IMG/VR virus record: IMGVR_UViG_3300042261_002385
Location: 124,001 to 188,000 of that record
DNA length: 64,000 nt
Strand: one strand, 5' to 3'
Shown: piece by piece, positions 1,957-55,227 of the stretch
How the letters are laid out: every line of letters starts with the position of its first letter
How positions within the stretch are numbered: position 1 is the first letter of the stretch
Notes under the pieces: model-generated
Told to the model about the DNA's origin: nothing
Databases searched by the model: none
What the model saw: only the letters and a program-made list of their open reading frames with translations
Made by a program: the position numbers and the translations under genes

Positions 1957-2421
1957 ATGAAAATAAAACGACTTATTAAATATTATCTTTTAGGTGAATC
2001 TCTAAAAGAAATAGAAATGAATAGAATTCTAGATAAAATATCAAAAAAAGTAAAACTTACTGACAGAGAAAAGGGATTCTTAGAACTTTATAATCTAACA
2101 GTAACTAAATCAGAAGATAAAGATTGGATGATGTTATCAAAAAGTGCAACCTCAACAAAGGTAAAAGAACTAATCGACTCAAATAGAAAAGTAATTTGTG
2201 ACTTACACGATAGAAATGGAAAAATAGGTCTTCAAATTATAAATGTTTTAGATAGCATAGAAGAAGAATTCTCAATTTTAGAACTCAAAGGTGAAGAAAA
2301 TCACAAATTACAGGATAAATTTCTTTACAATTTAATATATAGTGTAAAGAAAAATGAATATTCTCTACAAGAACACGATGAGTATTTCGAAAAATTAACC
2401 GTAGAAGGTGGTGAAAATTAA
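1957..2421 (+). CDS. Hypothetical protein with DUF6576-like helical hairpin
   Basis: 154 aa; MNRILDKISKKVKLTDREKGFL resembles the ILDKIS..LT..E..FL motif; basic N-terminus weakly resembling the CTS-like peptide. Confidence 0.55.
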   Translation: MKIKRLIKYYLLGESLKEIEMNRILDKISKKVKLTDREKGFLELYNLTVTKSEDKDWMMLSKSATSTKVKELIDSNRKVICDLHDRNGKIGLQIINVLDSIEEEFSILELKGEENHKLQDKFLYNLIYSVKKNEYSLQEHDEYFEKLTVEGGEN

Positions 2422-2725
2422 AAAGTATCAAAATTTTATCTCTGAAGAAATATCAGGAACCGAGTTAGTTGGTCCAGTAGGACCGGCGTATGGTGAAACG
2501 AGAACTCAGAACAAAACAGTAAATAAGTCTCACACATCTCTTGTTGGAGTAGAAGATAGAAATAATCCAAATTCTCAGAACAGTCTCACAAGTGATCTTT
2601 TCTTTGAAGATGATTACAATAAAATACATAATGATTATCTGAAATCCGGTGGAAATCAGAATCAACTTACAGGTAACAAACAAGATGATATAGCTATAAT
2701 GTTAGATTTTTTACAAGAAAACTAA
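2408..2725 (+). CDS. Putative internal head protein (CTS-like N-terminus)
   Basis: Starts MVKIKKYQNFISEE, like T4 capsid-targeting sequence MKTYQEFIAE. Confidence 0.55.
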   Translation: MVKIKKYQNFISEEISGTELVGPVGPAYGETRTQNKTVNKSHTSLVGVEDRNNPNSQNSLTSDLFFEDDYNKIHNDYLKSGGNQNQLTGNKQDDIAIMLDFLQEN

Positions 2726-2765
2726 CTTTTTATATATAATTTGATAAAAACAGAAATCAAAATTT

Positions 2766-4112
2766 ATGAGTAAATTAATTAAACTAAACACAAGTGAGGA
2801 TAAAGCCCTTTTAAACGATATCTTAAATGATGAGTTAATAGTAATTGAAGACATACAGGGTTCTAAAATCTGGATTAAATGGGATGGTCAAAATTTTGAA
2901 ATAAGACCAAAGTCAATAACGAATGAACCAATCAATTTAATCGATTTAGCAATGCAGAATTACTATAATCCTGTCACTAAATTCTTCTCAGAATTAGATG
3001 ATAGAGTTAAAAGTTTACTTAATCGTAAGTGGTGGTTTTGTTTTGAGTATTTTCCTGATGAACAACCGGCTAATATTGAATATTCTAGAGTTCCAAAGAA
3101 TCATTTAGTATTGAGTTCTATAAATAAAGGTGGTAAATTTGAATTTAATATTGAAGAACTTGATGAATACGCAAGATTATTTGATGTAGATTTGATTCCA
3201 GTTATTTATCAAGGTCAATTGACCGAGACTATGAAAGAAGCAATTATCTACTTTCTAAACACATCTGAAGAAGATTTAGAGTATGTTTTTGGTGATAAAT
3301 CATTTTCTTACTTTTTTTACAAAATATTGAATCCAATTTCTGAAAACTCATTTTTGATGGAAGAAGATTTTCAACAGAATTTAGAAAAATTAATAATTCG
3401 AAGTTCAAAAAGAGATATATCTTTCGAGTTACTGAATCCACTATACAAAAGAATGAATGACTCAAACACAACTGAGTTTGTTGAAATCTACACACTAATA
3501 CTAATTAATTTCTTAAATTTCTGTCAATCAGTGCAATTAGAAAGTGTGAAATTAAAAGGTGATACAAAAGAAGAGATGTATATTTACTTAATTTGCAAAT
3601 TATTCAATATTTATGTATCAGAAGTAAAAGAAGACCTACTTAATTTTGATTTTGTTGTTCCGGAATTTTTTGATAAAGAAAAATTTAAAATAAACACTGA
3701 GTTAATTAAAAATAAATTGACTAAAGATTATCTTAAAGAAGATGATAAACTTGAATACATCTTCAAAGTAATTTTAGGCTCATTTAACAAGAAAAGAAAA
3801 AAACCAATTGGTATCTTTACAGAAAATACCGTAAAACTATTTAATAAATTTGTTGATGATATTGAAGTCTATTTAGGTCGATATCTAAATAAAATTCAAG
3901 AAATTGAACTTGGAAGAGCTGGATTGTTAGACTTTGGTGATTTCTTTGACATTCAGTATGATACAGATGCAGAAGGTCAGGTTTATCCAGATGTTTATGA
4001 TGAGTTTGAAAAAGAAGAAGAAACTGGTAAAAAGAAAAAAGGTAAAGGTGGTAAATTTCCAGTAGGAGCTCCAACTAAAGAGGCACCATCTAAAGAAACA
4101 CCTACTAAGTAA
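2766..4112 (+). CDS. RNA ligase 2-like nucleotidyltransferase-fold protein, probably catalytically degenerate
   Basis: IEDIQGSKI (motif I position, Lys absent), FCFEYF, HLVLSSI, ARLFDVDLIPVIYQG, LEKLIIRS follow Rnl2-type motif order; acidic/basic C-tail. Confidence 0.5.
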   Translation: MSKLIKLNTSEDKALLNDILNDELIVIEDIQGSKIWIKWDGQNFEIRPKSITNEPINLIDLAMQNYYNPVTKFFSELDDRVKSLLNRKWWFCFEYFPDEQPANIEYSRVPKNHLVLSSINKGGKFEFNIEELDEYARLFDVDLIPVIYQGQLTETMKEAIIYFLNTSEEDLEYVFGDKSFSYFFYKILNPISENSFLMEEDFQQNLEKLIIRSSKRDISFELLNPLYKRMNDSNTTEFVEIYTLILINFLNFCQSVQLESVKLKGDTKEEMYIYLICKLFNIYVSEVKEDLLNFDFVVPEFFDKEKFKINTELIKNKLTKDYLKEDDKLEYIFKVILGSFNKKRKKPIGIFTENTVKLFNKFVDDIEVYLGRYLNKIQEIELGRAGLLDFGDFFDIQYDTDAEGQVYPDVYDEFEKEEETGKKKKGKGGKFPVGAPTKEAPSKETPTK

Positions 4113-4312
4113 TGAACTCAATAAATCTAAATATGACTTCACTAGAAGTTAAAGCAGAGTTAAGACCCTTAAAGTGCGAATGGACACGTGAAATGGCTAA
4201 AGATTTACAACATCATAGAGATGTGGATATGAGTTCCTTTGAACTGTTTATTGCAAAACAAATAAGAGCTAATAATCGCAAAAATTCAATCAAAAATATA
4301 TTTCTTAATTAA
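4112..4312 (+). CDS. Small protein containing a gp23-type major capsid protein segment
   Basis: VKAELRPLKCEWTREMAKDLQHHRDVD resembles gp23-family AKSRQLKAxWxxELAQDLxAxHGxD; ends NRKNSIKNIF. Confidence 0.6.
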   Translation: MNSINLNMTSLEVKAELRPLKCEWTREMAKDLQHHRDVDMSSFELFIAKQIRANNRKNSIKNIFLN

Positions 4313-4344
4313 AAACCATATCTTCTATTCCATATATAAATTAT

Positions 4345-5574
4345 ATGAGAATCTCAAACGAATTAGAGTCAGTATACCGTTCCACAATCACTCAAAAGTT
4401 AGACAAAAAAACTAAATCTCTACAATTTTTACCAAAAAGTTTAGAAGAAATCAGTAAGAAAAAACATTTCTATTTTTCGGAAAAAAAACTGAAAACAGCT
4501 TATATTATTGACATCGTTCATAATATGATACTTAAGTACTACTTCAAAAAAGAAAACAAATTTACGATTAATGCGACTGTTTTAAAACAGAAATATGGAC
4601 ACGAGTATAAAGCTTATGTTGATTTTTTGATTTATAAACAAATTATAAAAATGAAATGTAACTATAAAGCAGGTGTTACTTCTAGAATTTATGAATTAAA
4701 TCCAATAACTTTTAAACAACCAATAAGTCGAGTAAAAAATGACGATAAGGTTCTTTTAAAAAAATATAAGAAAAAAATATACGACACAATAGATTTTGTT
4801 AAAAAAGATGACTCTTCAATTCAACCAGAAATTAGAGAAAAATTAATTTCAGACCTTTTTAGTGTTGATATTGACTTTCAAAGAAGTATATTCTTTTTGA
4901 ATTGCTTGAAAAAAGAAGATATTGACATATATAATAGAAATATCTATTCGGTAGAGTCTATTAACGACAAGCACATATTTTATCACTTCGATAACTATGG
5001 TAGATTACATACAAATTTTACAATACTAAAATCATTCATTAGAAAAAACTGTTTACTAATTGATGGAGAAGAAACTTGTGAGATTGATATCAATAATTCA
5101 CAGCCTCTTTTTTTGTGCAAGTTGATACAAGAAAGTGAAACTAATTGGGTGAATAAAGATGAATTTGATTTCTTTAGAAATTTAGTAATGAATGGTAACT
5201 TTTACCAGTATTTAATTCAAATTACCGGTGAAAAAGATAGAAATAAAGTCAAAGAAATGACCTATAAAGTTCTTTTTGGTCACAATAGAATAAACTCAAA
5301 ATCTGATAAAATATTTTCACAGTTATTTCCAACAATACATCATTTTATTAAGCTTTATAAAAAAGAATGGGGTAATCATAAAATAGTAGCTCATGACCTA
5401 CAAAGAGCAGAGTCAAATTTAGTCTATAACAAAATTATTAAAAAGATAATGTTACTACATCCAGAAATAAAGATTATCACAGTTCATGACTCAATAATAT
5501 TTGCAAAAAAATATAGACAAATTGTCCAATCTATTTTTGACTATGAATTATCAAATGAATTTAATTTAAAGTAA
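4345..5574 (+). CDS. Minimal family-A/T7-type polymerase-like protein with N-terminal winged-helix-like region
   Basis: HFDNYGRLHT, EIDINNSQPLFL (motif A), RNKVKEMTYKVLFG (motif B), TVHDSII (motif C); 409 aa, no exonuclease motifs seen. Confidence 0.6.
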   Translation: MRISNELESVYRSTITQKLDKKTKSLQFLPKSLEEISKKKHFYFSEKKLKTAYIIDIVHNMILKYYFKKENKFTINATVLKQKYGHEYKAYVDFLIYKQIIKMKCNYKAGVTSRIYELNPITFKQPISRVKNDDKVLLKKYKKKIYDTIDFVKKDDSSIQPEIREKLISDLFSVDIDFQRSIFFLNCLKKEDIDIYNRNIYSVESINDKHIFYHFDNYGRLHTNFTILKSFIRKNCLLIDGEETCEIDINNSQPLFLCKLIQESETNWVNKDEFDFFRNLVMNGNFYQYLIQITGEKDRNKVKEMTYKVLFGHNRINSKSDKIFSQLFPTIHHFIKLYKKEWGNHKIVAHDLQRAESNLVYNKIIKKIMLLHPEIKIITVHDSIIFAKKYRQIVQSIFDYELSNEFNLK

Positions 5575-5597
5575 ATTCAAAATTTAATATATAATTT

Positions 5598-6137
5598 GTG
5601 ATAGATTTAAACAGTCCTAGATTATCTTTTATTCTAATTTCATCTAATTCTTTAGATGATATGATGTCTATATTGTGGGCAAAAAACTACCAGATTATTC
5701 CTATCAAAGGATACTATAAAGGTCAGTATGAGGACTCTGCAATGGCTTTTGCTCCTGTTGATAATGATGAGCTAAGAAAGGAATTAATATTTTTATTAAA
5801 TCACTTTAAACAAGAATGTGGATTTATTAAATACTTTGGAGAAACTGACGTAACAAAAGTTTTTGCAGATGGTTCTGAAAAACCAATGGGTATAACTCTC
5901 TACAATACAGATGAAGAAAATATATCCTATCTTTATAACGGTATGAGTTTTTCATTTGTTGAAAAAGTAAGATATTGGAAACCTACAAAATTAGAAGATT
6001 TTAAAGTAGGAATGTTAGTTGAATATCTAAACAATAATAAGTGGTATCAGAAAAAAATTGAAGATCCAAAGAGTGACTGGGATAGTATGTTCAAGCTACT
6101 GACTAAATACGATAAAGTAAGAGTAGCTTCAATTTAA
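5598..6137 (+). CDS. Hypothetical protein
   Basis: 179 aa, GTG start 4 nt after TTTAATATATA (5583-5593). Confidence 0.6.
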   Translation: MIDLNSPRLSFILISSNSLDDMMSILWAKNYQIIPIKGYYKGQYEDSAMAFAPVDNDELRKELIFLLNHFKQECGFIKYFGETDVTKVFADGSEKPMGITLYNTDEENISYLYNGMSFSFVEKVRYWKPTKLEDFKVGMLVEYLNNNKWYQKKIEDPKSDWDSMFKLLTKYDKVRVASI

Positions 6138-40396: not shown

Positions 40397-40789
40397 TTAA
40401 AAATATCTTCTTAAAACCTTATTCAGCTTAGCTTCTCTTATTTCATCAGGTTCAAGTGACAATTCAGTATATTCAATAAATATAGTAAAAATTAAACCAG
40501 GTAAAAAGAAAAATAAAAAACTTATCAAGTATCCTAAAAAAATTGATACTATCACATTTAAACTTAAATAACTATCAACTAAATAGATAGAAAAAAAATT
40601 GATAGAAGTAAATAACAAAGAAAATAATACTAGATATTTTTTTTCAGATTTTGCAAAATCATCACTGTAAATTGAAAAGAAGATACCTGCAAAAGAACCA
40701 AAAGATGCTAATGCTGATAAAGATAGAGCTGATATCAAAAGATTTTTAAAGCTTTTTCTGAAAATCTTTTGCATTTTATAAAAGAACAT
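40397..40789 (-). CDS. Membrane protein (about 3 TM helices)
   Basis: Hydrophobic stretches; ends EIREAKLNKVLRRYF. Confidence 0.6.
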   Translation of the reverse strand: MFFYKMQKIFRKSFKNLLISALSLSALASFGSFAGIFFSIYSDDFAKSEKKYLVLFSLLFTSINFFSIYLVDSYLSLNVIVSIFLGYLISFLFFFLPGLIFTIFIEYTELSLEPDEIREAKLNKVLRRYF

Positions 40790-41420: not shown

Positions 41421-41673
41421 CTAACAATTCTCTTAGTAAAAATTCTCTGTTAAGTTCAGTATTTTTGTCGAAAATGACACTAATTTGTGAAAAAACTCTT
41501 CCTTCAAAATAAGTATTTGATACAGTGATTTTATATTTTGAATTAAGATAAAATGGATTAACATACTTTATAAGTAACATTCTTGCATTGTCTATATTAG
41601 TTACAACTTCCGGAAAGGTGTATGTTTTTAAAATCTGTTCTTTATTTTCTAAATATAAATTTACCTCTGTCAT
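41413..41673 (-). CDS. Hypothetical protein
   Basis: 86 aa; ends LNREFLLRELLDD. Confidence 0.5.
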   Translation of the reverse strand: MTEVNLYLENKEQILKTYTFPEVVTNIDNARMLLIKYVNPFYLNSKYKITVSNTYFEGRVFSQISVIFDKNTELNREFLLRELLDD

Positions 41674-41858
41674 ACACCTAAATTTTTTTTATATATTCTT
41701 TTTATTTTCAAAACTCTACTTTGTATTTTAAAAAACTTATTTTTTTTATTTATCATTTCATCATAAAGAGAAATACTTACACCACCCATACCATAAGAAG
41801 AGTTTATTTGCATCTTTAACAACATCAATTCATTCCTTAGTTTATTCATGATGGTCAA
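41670..41858 (-). CDS. Hypothetical protein
   Basis: 62 aa; ends SRVLKIKRIYKK. Confidence 0.5.
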   Translation of the reverse strand: MTIMNKLRNELMLLKMQINSSYGMGGVSISLYDEMINKKNKFFKIQSRVLKIKRIYKKNLGV

Positions 41859-53659: not shown

Positions 53660-54031
53660 TTATTTTTCAAAATAAGAATCAATCTTTTCTTTTTCTTCTT
53701 TAGAAACTTCTGTGTAGATTCTCTCAAATCTATCCATCACTTCTTTTGCTGCGGCTAATGGAGCATCTTCTTCAGATGGAATTTCTGTTGGGGTAATTCC
53801 TGGACGAGTTGGTCTTGGAATTGTAGTTGGAGCCGGAGTTGTAGTCGGAGATGGTTTTGTCTCTGTTCCAGCCAACGGAGCATCTTCTTCTGACGGAATT
53901 TCTGTTGGTGTGATTCCTGGACGAGTTGGTCTTGGAATTGTAGTTGGAGCCGGAGTCGTAGTTGGAGATGGTTTTGTTTCCGTCATCACAAACTCTTCGA
54001 CAAATCTCTGATATTTTTTGATATAACCCAT
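53660..54031 (-). CDS. Pro/Thr-rich CTS-like protein with internal duplication
   Basis: Starts MGYIKKYQRFVEE; TTTAATATATA at 54051-54061. Confidence 0.65.
   Translation of the reverse strand: MGYIKKYQRFVEEFVMTETKPSPTTTPAPTTIPRPTRPGITPTEIPSEEDAPLAGTETKPSPTTTPAPTTIPRPTRPGITPTEIPSEEDAPLAAAKEVMDRFERIYTEVSKEEKEKIDSYFEK
53760..53983 (-). repeat. 117-bp-period tandem duplication (TETKPSPTTTPAPTTIPRPTRPGITPTEIPSEEDAPLA x2)
   Basis: Copies begin at 53760 and 53877; peptide identical, about 8 nucleotide differences, all silent. Confidence 0.92.
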
Positions 54032-54139: not shown

Positions 54140-54718
54140 ATGAAAAGATTTTCAGAATTACAAAAGAAATCAAAAGTTAGAAGAATTTTCGAAGCAGAAG
54201 AAGGAGCAAATCTTCCATCTAACTACAAAGATATGTCAAAAGAAGAACTTATAAAATTGATGTCAGGTCAAGCTGGTAAAGAAGAAGATAATGAAAAAGA
54301 AGATGAAAAAGAAGACAAACAAGAATCATCAAAAGAAGGTGGTGATGTGGTAAAATTCTTTTCTAAATTATTCGAAAGTAGAGAAATGGCTCACATATAT
54401 CACTTAACGGTAAAAGGTGAGATGGGTTCACACGCAGCTCACTTAGCACTAAATGAATACTATGATGGAATTCTTGGTTTTATTGATGAAATGATTGAAG
54501 TTTATCAAGGTCAATATGGTATAATTGAGGGTTATGAAACAATTGATACTTCGGAGACTCAAAGTAAAGATAAAATTGATTATTTTGAAGAACTTGTTAA
54601 ACAAATCAGAGAAGATAGAAAATCAATCAATAGCGAAGATACTCATATTCATAATATCGTTGATGAAGCAATTGCTTTAATGTATAAAACACTATATAAG
54701 TTAAAATATAACAAATAA
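54140..54718 (+). CDS. DUF5856-type ferritin-like protein with N-terminal extension
   Basis: AHIYHL...SHAAHLALNEYYDGI..FIDEMIEVYQGQYG four-helix pattern; starts MKRFSEL. Confidence 0.68.
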   Translation: MKRFSELQKKSKVRRIFEAEEGANLPSNYKDMSKEELIKLMSGQAGKEEDNEKEDEKEDKQESSKEGGDVVKFFSKLFESREMAHIYHLTVKGEMGSHAAHLALNEYYDGILGFIDEMIEVYQGQYGIIEGYETIDTSETQSKDKIDYFEELVKQIREDRKSINSEDTHIHNIVDEAIALMYKTLYKLKYNK

Positions 54719-54722
54719 AAAT

Positions 54723-54750
54723 AAAACCCACTTACAGAGTGGGTTTTTTT
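54723..54750. terminator. Intrinsic terminator, probably bidirectional
   Basis: aaaacccact-tacag-agtgggtttttt between convergent genes. Confidence 0.8.
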
Positions 54751-55031
54751 ATTTCTATATTTTTGTAATATCTAATTTTTATAATATTTTTAGAGTATCT
54801 ACTCATTATTGATTTATTTAATGAAAATTCATCTTTAACATTTAAACCTAAATCAAATATCTTACTAATCGTTCTTTTTCTATTTACATTTTTAGAACCA
54901 TATTCAACTATTTCTGAGGAAGTAGTCATTGGTATATAAGGTACCCAAACGTATCCAGGTTCTAAATTAGAACTCTTCTTTCCTATTTGAATTTTCTGTT
55001 CACCAGGTATTTGATTTTGGTTAACAAACAT
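54732..55031 (-). CDS. Small protein containing the C-terminal segment of a gp23-type major capsid protein
   Basis: LEPGYVWVPYIPM ... KSIMSRYSKNII..RYY resembles gp23-family GYVYAPYxPL ... KGxMTRYAKxxV...FY; interrupted by NRKRTISKIF. Confidence 0.65.
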   Translation of the reverse strand: MFVNQNQIPGEQKIQIGKKSSNLEPGYVWVPYIPMTTSSEIVEYGSKNVNRKRTISKIFDLGLNVKDEFSLNKSIMSRYSKNIIKIRYYKNIEIKKPTL

Positions 55032-55227
55032 TTTTGTAGATTTTATTTATAGAACTTTTTCTTCTTAAAGGTCTTTCGAAAATACCTAACTTTCTGAGTA
55101 TTTCTAAGTCTATTTCTTTTGCTACTTGCTCAGATAAAATTTTAGTAAGTTCAGATTCTATGTCTCTTGTAGAAGTAGAAACAGTATTATTACTATCAAC
55201 CACACCTTTGACTTTATACTTTTTCAC
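55021..55227 (-). CDS. Small protein containing the spine-helix segment of a gp23-type major capsid protein
   Basis: DIESELTKILSEQVAKEIDLEILRKL resembles gp23-family DAEAELxxILSxxIxxEIxREIL; ends RRKSSINKIY. Confidence 0.65.
   Translation of the reverse strand: MKKYKVKGVVDSNNTVSTSTRDIESELTKILSEQVAKEIDLEILRKLGIFERPLRRKSSINKIYKNVC

What the first reader, a model, noticed from the sequence alone, without database searches (positions are those of the whole stretch)
4112..4312. A third capsid-fragment mini-protein 50 kb away supplies the segment just upstream of the spine helix
Seen: VKAELRPLKCEWTREMAKDLQHHRDVD followed by NRKNSIKNIF. Established: gp23-family AKSRQLKAxW/YxxELAQDLxAxHGxD directly precedes the DAEAEL helix found in the 55021 ORF. 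So three separate ORFs carry three non-redundant capsid segments, each with the same added motif. Simple decay of one pseudogene does not explain this well. Inference: a dispersed family of capsid-peptide effectors. This ORF abuts the degenerate-ligase gene and lies just upstream of the mini-polymerase.
Basis: partly seen in the sequence, partly recalled or inferred. Interest (0 to 1): 0.78.

Follow-up and report, generated by a model that had tools for sequence, protein, structure and literature searches.

The report
Capsid-derived mini-protein family in huge phage
A 66-residue gene in a 436 kb freshwater phage is a conserved, selected copy of one short piece of the T4-type capsid protein, and it is one of at least five such capsid-piece mini-genes sharing a helix tag; no search here found the family described, and its function is untested.

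Summary
ORF 4112-4312 (+) exists. Its residues 2-52 are homologous to the gp23 segment just before and into the spine helix: Pfam Gp23 E 5.5e-5, hhalign 96.7% with E 3.7e-10, and a family profile hit on solved T4 gp23 residues 248-301 at E 3.6e-6. It is not a decaying pseudogene. dN/dS is 0.18-0.38 with saturated dS. It keeps its place between the same two genes in every relative examined. About 255 clusters of mostly 55-75 aa homologues exist in metagenomes.

The window's genome is a 436 kb Mahaphage-like virus record. It has at least five such mini-genes, which together tile the HK97 core (N-arm/E-loop, strand, spine helix, A-domain, C-terminus). All carry the R-[KD]-x-[KS]-I-x-x-I-[FY] motif.

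ORF1 and ORF2 overlap on the spine helix. In ORF1 the motif is the end of a helix collinear with the spine helix, so it is not clearly an added part.

ORF1-3 resemble canonical gp23, not the resident capsid protein. In other phages several pieces are fused into one protein.

Function is inferred only. My best guess is a trans-acting mimic of conserved capsid elements, acting as a decoy or interference agent. The rivals are an accessory or split capsid protein, or a partner of the neighbouring enzymes.

The parts
4112..4312 (+). ORF1, a 66-aa mini-protein (the finding). It consists of an MCP-derived strand region, a short helix, and a long helix ending in the motif.
4115..4267 (+). Residues 2-52. 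This segment is homologous to gp23-type MCP, covering the strand before the spine helix, the ELAQDL turn and the start of the spine helix. It corresponds to T4 gp23 residues 248-301.
4274..4303 (+). Motif NRKNSIKNIF (residues 55-64). R56 is invariant and I60 and I63 nearly invariant across 61 family members. It lies inside predicted helix 41-63. The population variant 4279 C>T is synonymous in R56.
2766..4112 (+). p448, the upstream gene whose stop overlaps the ORF1 start. It looks like an RNA ligase (Rnl2-type) by language-model features only. Its synteny with ORF1 is kept in distant relatives.
   Evidence: no Pfam or PDB sequence hit
4345..5574 (+). p409, the downstream gene. It is always found after ORF1-type genes. 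Its function was not established here.
   Evidence: searches gave no family
55021..55227 (-). ORF2, 68 aa. It has a canonical-type spine helix (DIESELTKILSEQVAKEIDLEILRKL), a linker, and the motif RRKSSINKIY.
   Evidence: hhalign 95.3%, E 2e-8, MCP 329-362
54732..55031 (-). ORF3, 99 aa. It is the C-terminal ~60 residues of the MCP with a ~20-aa insertion that carries the motif NRKRTISKIF. It overlaps ORF2 by 11 nt.
   Evidence: hhalign 95.2%, E 2.6e-8, MCP 487-541, insertion aligned as a gap
41670..41858 (-). A 62-aa ORF ending in a tag-like tail (SRVLKIKRIY). It contains KMQINSSYGMGG, which looks like PolB motif B by eye only. Its membership in the tag family is weak.
   Evidence: no Pfam support

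Best explanation
Shown:
- ORF1 is a real small gene under purifying selection, derived from a canonical gp23-type major capsid protein. It keeps the strand and turn that precede the spine helix, plus a shortened helix at the spine-helix position. The basic/hydrophobic end of that helix, R-K-x-S-I-x-x-I-F, is the shared motif.
- It is one of at least five MCP-derived mini-proteins in this 436 kb Mahaphage-like genome: P_N, ORF1, ORF2, P_A and ORF3. Together they tile the HK97 core, and each carries the motif.
- ORF1-3 match canonical gp23 and not the phage's own, strongly diverged MCP.
- ORF1 always sits between an RNA-ligase-like gene, whose stop overlaps its start, and a 409-aa gene, in a co-directional non-structural cluster.

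Inferred (mechanism):
- The mini-proteins act in trans as molecular mimics of the most conserved elements of T4-type virion proteins.
- Each presents one interface element on a common helix tag that binds a shared partner or drives oligomerisation.
- The mimic engages a non-self target. This could be a host factor or immune sensor that recognises conserved capsid segments, as in T4 Gol/EF-Tu/Lit, or the assembling capsid of a co-infecting canonical T4-like phage.
- It therefore works as a decoy or a dominant-negative piece.

I put the identity part at about 0.9. The stated confidence refers to the mechanism.
For: - Homology.
- Selection and conservation: dN/dS 0.18-0.38 against 0.04-0.10 for the neighbours, with dS above 1. 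There are 17 close and 255 clustered homologues, mostly 55-75 aa. The only listed variant inside ORF1 in two other metagenome runs, 4279 C>T, is synonymous.
- Family and tiling. Orthologues of all five pieces are intact in relatives.
- Motif: the strict pattern is unique to ORF1-3. A PSSM scores 15 or more in 14 ORFs against 0-3 in shuffles. Codons vary, so the constraint is on the protein.
- Non-self likeness: ORF1 family members score 9-33 bits on the canonical MCP model, apart from one partial sequence (-1.3), and at most 0.6 on the resident-type model. ORF2 and ORF3 are likewise canonical-leaning.
- Faster evolution than the neighbours and a variable architecture: the middle helix is absent in W02, the motif position shifts in the W01 ORF3, and fusions occur elsewhere. 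This is typical of conflict genes.
- Context: a tight co-directional cluster with an RNA-ligase-like gene and no terminator-like site.
- Precedent: a short conserved gp23 region has a trans-acting role with a host factor and a defence protease (PMC3014915). MCP-sensing bacterial receptors are also known (bioRxiv 10.64898/2026.01.04.697583).
Against: - No target, interaction, expression timing or phenotype was observed.
- The only RNA evidence is one 188-nt contig on the neighbouring gene.
- P_N is resident-type, not canonical-type (27-76 bits against 13-17). That fits a role with the phage's own capsid.
- Known MCP sensors recognise whole folds over large interfaces, which a 66-aa piece may not mimic.
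- If the resident MCP has already diverged, a decoy for canonical gp23 is not obviously needed.
- Tiling of the fold and natural fusions of pieces fit a cooperative, structural role at least as well.
- Two literature searches found no described capsid-fragment decoy.
Confidence: 0.33

Rival explanations
1. The pieces work together for the phage's own virion. They would be a dismantled second capsid protein whose fragments re-associate by fragment complementation, with the shared helix acting as a zipper. Alternatively they are accessory, cement or size-determining peptides of the very large capsid.
For: - The five pieces tile the HK97 core with little redundancy. P_A ends at MCP position 486 and ORF3 starts at 487.
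- The pieces co-occur in all relatives examined.
- In other phages, strand, spine helix, N-arm and E-loop strand are fused in one 115-220 aa protein in at least 7 clusters. An ORF3-like gene abuts one such fusion.
- P_N is a paralogue of the resident MCP N-terminus.
Against: - ORF1-3 do not resemble the resident MCP they would have to fit.
- The pieces are scattered over 250 kb in different gene clusters, and ORF1 sits in a non-structural cluster.
- The middle helix of ORF1 is dispensable.
- AF2 gave no confident fold for a natural fusion (pLDDT 45).
- No five-piece split capsid protein is known to me.
Confidence: 0.27
2. ORF1 is a small subunit or regulator of its neighbours, the RNA-ligase-like p448 and p409. 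Its capsid likeness is only a mark of its origin. The tail would be a docking peptide, for example a clamp-binding-like or membrane-binding-like amphipathic end.
For: - The order p448-ORF1-p409 is strictly kept, with stop/start overlap, even in members only about 40% identical.
- The tail has the spacing S/K-I-x-x-I-F preceded by basic residues. From my own knowledge it resembles the C-terminal clamp-binding ends of T4-type polymerases and MinD-type membrane helices. This was not tested.
Against: - The most conserved part of ORF1, besides the tail, is exactly the gp23-like strand. A vestige would not keep it.
- The same tail occurs on other MCP pieces that have no such neighbours.
Confidence: 0.15
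3. The ORFs are inert remnants of an old capsid gene copy, and the motif is a by-product of A-rich sequence in front of the next start codon.
For: - The genome is 31% GC, and many small ORFs end in K/R/N/I-rich tails just before the next start.
- Low-scoring tail hits are no more frequent than in shuffles.
Against: - dN/dS is well below 1 at saturated dS.
- Reading frames are intact in all relatives, and R56 is invariant with changing codons.
- Motif copies lie inside P_N and ORF3, far from any start codon.
- There are hundreds of homologous clusters.
Confidence: 0.04

Closest known systems
T4 gp23 major capsid protein (Pfam PF07068; PDB 6uzc, 5vf3, 7vs5)
   Same: ORF1 residues 2-54 align with gp23 248-301 (EAKSRQLKAAYSIELAQDLRAVHGMDADAELSGILATEIMLE), E 3.6e-6. 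ORF2, ORF3, P_N and P_A map to other gp23-family segments.
   Different: ORF1 is 66 aa and not ~520 aa, so it has no complete HK97 fold. It falls just under the Pfam cut-off. The genome has its own complete, strongly diverged MCP elsewhere.
T4 gp24 vertex protein (paralogue of gp23)
   Same: It is a second capsid-protein copy kept beside the major one. In T4 it lies next to the RNA ligase 2 gene, and ORF1 lies next to an RNA-ligase-like gene.
   Different: gp24 is full length. The ORF1 family profile matches gp23 much better than gp24 (E 3.6e-6 against 0.25). The gene orientation differs: convergent in T4, co-directional here.
Gol region of T4 gp23 (activator of the Lit protease through EF-Tu)
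   Same: It is a short, highly conserved capsid-protein stretch that acts on a host factor apart from capsid building (PMC3014915).
   Different: Gol is part of the full-length protein and lies in its first quarter. ORF1 corresponds to residues 248-301 and is a separate gene. Only P_N covers the N-arm region. No EF-Tu or Lit link was tested.
Satellite capsid-redirecting capsid homologues (e.g. Ccm of SaPIbov5) and other interfering capsid copies (from my own knowledge)
   Same: A capsid-protein derivative is used to act on another element's capsid assembly.
   Different: Those are whole HK97-fold proteins encoded by satellites. Here the derivatives are fragments of 45-150 aa encoded by a huge phage and carrying a common tag.
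T4 internal proteins with a capsid-targeting sequence
   Different: The T4 tag is N-terminal and is cut off after L/I-x-E. The tag here is C-terminal or internal and helical. Packaging was not tested.

Membership tests
Pfam PF07068 Gp23 (T4-type major capsid protein) | Score at or above the curated gathering cut-off (24.4 bits) | tested here: not met
   23.2 bits, E 5.5e-5. Several close homologues do carry a precomputed PF07068 hit.
Pfam PF07068 Gp23 (T4-type major capsid protein) | Homology of the matched segment to gp23 | tested here: met
   hhalign 96.7%, E 3.7e-10. Profile against solved T4 gp23, E 3.6e-6.
Pfam PF07068 Gp23 (T4-type major capsid protein) | Complete HK97 fold (N-arm, E-loop, P-domain, A-domain) in one chain | tested here: not met
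   66 aa covers profile positions 132-183 of 376. The AF2 model is an extended N-terminus plus two helices.
gp24-type vertex protein | Full-length paralogue that is closer to gp24 than to gp23 | tested here: not met
   gp24 chains score E 0.25 against gp23 at E 3.6e-6. Only one full-length Gp23-family gene is in the genome.
Pseudogene fragment | Neutral evolution (dN/dS near 1) and loss of the frame in relatives | tested here: not met
   dN/dS 0.18-0.38 with dS 1.05-1.74. The ORF is intact in every relative examined.
Gol-type peptide (Lit/EF-Tu) | Lies in the conserved region of the first quarter of gp23 | tested here: not met
   ORF1 maps to gp23 248-301. The Gol location is from PMC3014915.
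Gol-type peptide (Lit/EF-Tu) | Binds EF-Tu and activates a protease | not testable with these tools
   This needs biochemistry.
T4-type packaged internal protein | N-terminal capsid-targeting sequence removed at L/I-x-E | tested here: not met
   The shared tag is C-terminal or internal. No shared N-terminal tag is seen.
Tag-bearing mini-protein family of this phage clade (defined here) | Small ORF with R-[KD]-x-[KS]-I-x-x-I-[FY], kept in orthologues | tested here: met
Intron or intein remnant at a split gene | Intron RNA family or intein blocks at the break, with DNA-level conservation of the junction | tested here: not met
   No Rfam family in the window. The motif codons and the downstream DNA are not conserved.

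The most novel reading that the evidence does not exclude
A huge phage keeps a deconstructed capsid protein. It consists of five or more separately encoded, separately selected mini-proteins, each made of one HK97-fold element plus a shared helix tag. The same tag also appears on a tail-sheath N-terminal peptide. Together they would form a previously undescribed class of trans-acting mimics of the conserved virion proteome. They would work either as decoys against host sensors or rival phages, or as a capsid subunit rebuilt from pieces.
Probability: 0.3. Interest if true: 0.85.

Novelty: new variant of a known kind. Interest (0 to 1): 0.7.

Why it matters
Capsid-protein paralogues are known, such as vertex proteins and satellite redirectors. 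A conserved and widespread family of fragment-sized capsid derivatives with a common tag is not something I could find described. If the pieces act as mimics, they would be a new type of phage weapon or counter-defence aimed at recognition of the conserved virion proteome. If they re-assemble, they would be an extreme case of a split structural protein, and they might bear on how very large capsids are built. Either way the family gives a concrete and cheap experimental handle on huge uncultured freshwater phages: 66-aa proteins with about 255 natural variants.

Tried and rejected
- Intron or intein origin of the split. There is no Rfam family in the window and no DNA-level conservation at or after the motif.
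- Motif as a by-product of A-rich pre-start sequence. This was rejected for the core members, because internal copies exist and codons vary. It was not rejected for low-scoring tails.
- ORF1-3 as copies of the resident MCP. Rejected: at most 0.6 bits on the resident model for ORF1.
- T4 gp67/gp68 core proteins as relatives of the mini-proteins. No similarity was found.
- P0032, a 3588-aa hit with 15 matches, is an unrelated repeat protein.
- Pfam and PDB searches of p448 and p409 gave nothing.
- Pfam gave no support for my visual reading of PolB-like, TerL-like and sheath-like fragments among the tag-bearing ORFs. Only the sheath-like one has a weak match, to the N-terminus of the resident 1334-aa ORF (E 0.056).
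- AF2 of a natural fused mini-MCP gave pLDDT 45, so no fold search was run.
- RNA runs gave no usable evidence of ORF1 transcription.
- The origin of the motif stays unresolved. Candidates are the end of the spine helix, the Delta-domain helix, E-loop strand 1 and the A-domain helix. Only collinearity with the spine helix in ORF1 is backed by a tool result.
Full report
**The object**

The window is bases 124001-188000 of a 436,265-base IMG/VR virus record with 31% G+C. Its complete major capsid protein (MCP) lies outside the window, at G000 267439-269208 on the minus strand, and is 590 aa long. It is 70% identical to the MCPs of the 635-642 kb uncultured phages LR745206.1 and LR756502.1, and about 29% identical to Lak phage MCPs. 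The genome therefore belongs with the Mahaphage-type huge phages. Near-identical DNA occurs in at least 19 public DNA runs, most of them labelled freshwater, lake or drinking-water metagenomes.

Its ATG overlaps the stop of the upstream 448-aa gene (TAATG). A 409-aa gene follows 32 nt downstream. The six co-directional genes from 1957 to 6137 contain no terminator-like site, and promoter-like sites occur no more often than chance.

**Is the capsid likeness real?**

Yes. The evidence is:
- Pfam Gp23 (PF07068) matches residues 2-52 to profile positions 132-183, with E 5.5e-5 and 23.2 bits. This is 1.2 bits under the curated cut-off.
- PHROG 138 (major head protein) agrees.
- An alignment of ORF1 with 13 homologues, compared by hhalign with 11 canonical T4-like MCPs, gives 96.7% probability and E 3.7e-10. 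Columns 3-51 align with MCP positions 298-351.
- A 61-member family profile hits solved T4 gp23 chains (6uzc, 5vf3, 8gmo, 8t9r) at E 3.6e-6, on residues 248-301 (NEMGFRIDKQVIEAKSRQLKAAYSIELAQDLRAVHGMDADAELSGILATEIMLE). The vertex protein gp24 reaches only E 0.25.

**Is it a living gene?**

Yes. The evidence is:
- Orthologues sit at the same place, between p448 and p409 homologues, in LR745206.1, LR756502.1 and three IMG/VR contigs. Two short metagenome contigs carrying distant members (39% and 36% identical to ORF1 in A8) show the same arrangement on the flank each retains: a p448 homologue upstream of P0036 and a p409 homologue downstream of P0048.
- dN/dS is 0.18, 0.38 and 0.27 against three relatives, at dS 1.05-1.74. 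The neighbouring genes give 0.04-0.10.
- In two other metagenome runs (X3, X6) the only listed variant inside ORF1 is 4279 C>T, which is a synonymous change in the R56 codon.
- The 5.8-billion-protein search found 17 homologues of 51-69 aa.
- The exhaustive profile search found 255 clusters at E up to 0.001. Of the best 149, 113 are 80 aa or shorter, and nearly all of the best-scoring ones match the whole profile, tail included.
- Across 61 members R56 is invariant and I60 and I63 nearly so. In closer sets the strand region (M8 T9 S10 E12 V13, W24, E27 M28, D31) is invariant too.
- The middle of the protein is variable and can be absent. The LR756502.1 orthologue has 53 aa, consisting of strand plus tail only.

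**Shape**

AlphaFold2 with the 61-sequence alignment gave mean pLDDT 77.5. The model has no regular structure for residues 1-25, a helix at 26-35, and one long helix at 41-63 that contains the motif. Confidence is highest in block 51-60. This helix is collinear with the gp23 spine helix in the profile alignment. In ORF1 the 'added motif' is therefore best read as the end of a shortened helix at the spine-helix position.

**The family in this genome**

The strict motif occurs in only three of the 10,409 six-frame open segments: ORF1, ORF2 (55021-55227, minus) and ORF3 (54732-55031, minus).

I built an HMM from 12 canonical T4-like MCPs and searched it without filters against all open segments. 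It found the resident MCP and five short ORFs. The first-pass HMM ranges and the hhalign results on ortholog alignments are:

| Piece | Location | First-pass HMM range | hhalign vs canonical MCPs |
|---|---|---|---|
| P_N | G000 222057-222500 (+), 147 aa | 81-125, plus a Delta-domain-like N-terminus | 96.4%, E 1.4e-9, MCP 81-127 |
| ORF1 | window 4112-4312 (+) | 300-337 | 96.7%, E 3.7e-10, MCP 298-351 |
| ORF2 | window 55021-55227 (-) | 335-361 | 95.3%, E 2e-8, MCP 329-362 |
| P_A | G000 350689-351078 (-), 130 aa | 402-484 | 23%, E 9e-4, MCP 418-486 (weak) |
| ORF3 | window 54732-55031 (-) | 478-506 and 515-542 | 95.2%, E 2.6e-8, MCP 487-541 |

In ORF3 the 20-aa stretch carrying the motif is aligned as a gap. 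In P_N the 47-aa stretch carrying the motif is likewise a gap. Only the T4-type insertion domain (model positions 126-299) is not represented.

All five pieces have intact orthologues in relatives. All carry the motif, in these forms:
- C-terminal in ORF1 and ORF2.
- Internal in ORF3 of four genomes, but C-terminal in the LR745206.1 orthologue.
- Near the C-terminus of P_A (TRDNRIEAVL, ARDKKIDTIL).
- Internal in P_N (NRDGKIDAIV).

In one relative, a 62-aa A-domain piece with FRKEKVNRLF at its end lies just upstream of the ORF2 orthologue.

A position matrix built from these instances scores 15 or more in 14 ORFs of the genome, against 0-3 in residue shuffles. Hits that were not in the first training set include:
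- Two adjacent ORFs of 45 and 51 aa at G000 377616-377868. One has an MCP C-terminal-like stretch.
- A 42-aa ORF right after P_N that begins MNKYVSPGVYVKEVD. This resembles a tail-sheath N-terminus and matches the N-terminus of the resident 1334-aa ORF, but only weakly (E 0.056).
- A 228-aa protein just upstream of P_A.

Lower-scoring tails are no more frequent than in shuffles, and they may simply reflect A-rich sequence in front of the next start codon. My visual reading of PolB-like and TerL-like motifs in two of them has no Pfam support. The motif's codons vary and nothing downstream of it is conserved, so the constraint acts on the protein.

**Whose capsid protein?**

I scored the pieces on the canonical model and on a model built from four resident-type MCPs:

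| Piece | Canonical model (bits) | Resident-type model (bits) |
|---|---|---|
| ORF1 family | 9-33 (one partial sequence, P0016, scores -1.3) | at most 0.6 |
| ORF2 | 12-21 | -1 to 9 |
| ORF3 | 10-35 | -0.5 to 17 |
| P_N | 13-17 | 27-76 |

P_N also shares resident-specific features such as MGVTG and WMxxYAExHSINEN. The resident strand and spine-helix region is almost invariant among the four genomes and does not look canonical. So the set is not a recent break-up of the resident gene. ORF1-3 keep the consensus of ordinary T4-like capsid proteins.

**Fusions elsewhere**

Among the longer hits, seven clusters encode one protein of 115-282 aa. In these, the ORF1/ORF2-type segment (model 300-360) is followed by the N-arm and E-loop strand (model 76-126). 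This order is permuted relative to a normal MCP. On one contig an 84-aa ORF3-like gene without the tag abuts such a fusion. This is Rosetta-stone-type evidence that the pieces work together in at least some lineages. AF2 gave no confident model for one such fusion (pLDDT 45), so no fold comparison was made.

**What it does**

Nothing here shows function. Three readings remain open.

1. *Trans-acting mimic aimed at a non-self target.* The target would be a host factor or sensor that recognises conserved capsid segments, or the capsid of a co-infecting T4-like phage.
   - In favour: the canonical rather than resident likeness of ORF1-3; the non-structural gene cluster beside an RNA-ligase-like gene (ESM features 0.93-0.95); faster evolution than the neighbours; and the variable architecture.
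   - Precedent exists. The Gol region of T4 gp23 acts through EF-Tu on the Lit protease (PMC3014915), and bacterial receptors sense MCPs and other core virion proteins.
2. *A cooperative structural role.* This would be a split or accessory capsid protein. In favour: the tiling, the co-occurrence, the fusions, and the resident-type P_N.
3. *A partner of p448 and p409.* In favour: the strict synteny and the stop/start overlap.

I rank them 0.33, 0.27 and 0.15. Inert remnants get 0.04, and the rest is left open.

**Comparison with the known**

The segment is homologous to gp23, but ORF1 fails membership as a capsid protein because it has no complete fold and scores under the cut-off. It also fails these other tests:
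- It is not gp24-like.
- It is not a Gol-type peptide by position.
- It is not a T4-type packaged internal protein, because the tag is at the wrong end.
- It is not an intron or intein remnant.

Three literature searches found no description of capsid-fragment mini-proteins. Databases merely label some members 'Gp23 domain-containing'.

Noticed in passing
G000 269291-271387 (-), outside the window, just upstream of the resident MCP gene (L001): The protein has at least nine tandem 14-aa repeats, NLDKNI(A/S)YSEY(I/L)AE. Its position suggests a scaffold-type protein.
   Followed up: no
window 53660-54031 (-): A 123-aa ORF contains two identical ~40-aa Pro/Thr-rich repeats (TETKPSPTTTPAPTTIPRPTRPGITPTEIPSEEDAPLA).
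   Followed up: no
window 2766-4312 compared with T4 (L050 10324-12641): In T4 the vertex-protein gene 24 and the RNA ligase 2 gene rnlB are convergent neighbours. Here an RNA-ligase-like gene lies directly upstream of the capsid-derived ORF1, in the same direction. This could be a relic of the old gene order or a coincidence.
   Followed up: partly
G000 220543-222067; L006 1678-2472; L007 1678-2457; L054 593-6600: Capsid mini-genes recur next to glycosyltransferase or sugar-nucleotide genes. P_N follows two GT-like genes, the ORF2 orthologues follow a 259-264-aa GT-like gene, and a fused mini-MCP sits beside an epimerase/FdtA/GT2 cluster.
   Followed up: no
P0092, P0093, P0143, P0146 (alignment A9): Fused mini-MCPs carry the same FKFLRG-like peptide at both their N and C ends. 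They look as if each were one unit of a tandem or circularly permuted array.
   Followed up: no
G000 222496-222621 (+), L051 1997-2122: A 42-aa ORF right after P_N has a tail-sheath-like N-terminal peptide (MNKYVSPGVYVKEVD) plus the tag TRNKKIARIF. In relative G001 a Delta-domain piece, this peptide and the tag are fused in one 88-aa protein (95-aa open frame).
   Followed up: partly
window 41670-41858 (-) and 40397-40789 (-): A 62-aa ORF contains KMQINSSYGMGG (spacing like PolB motif B) and a tag-like end. A 130-aa membrane-like ORF ends in EIREAKLNKVLRRYF. Neither has database support.
   Followed up: partly
window 4377-4562: One 188-nt contig from a metatranscriptome library is identical to part of p409. 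It could be transcript or carried-over DNA.
   Followed up: no
window 54140-54718 (+): A DUF5856 protein (PHROG 858, 'starvation-inducible transcriptional regulator', E 4e-18) sits beside ORF3.
   Followed up: no
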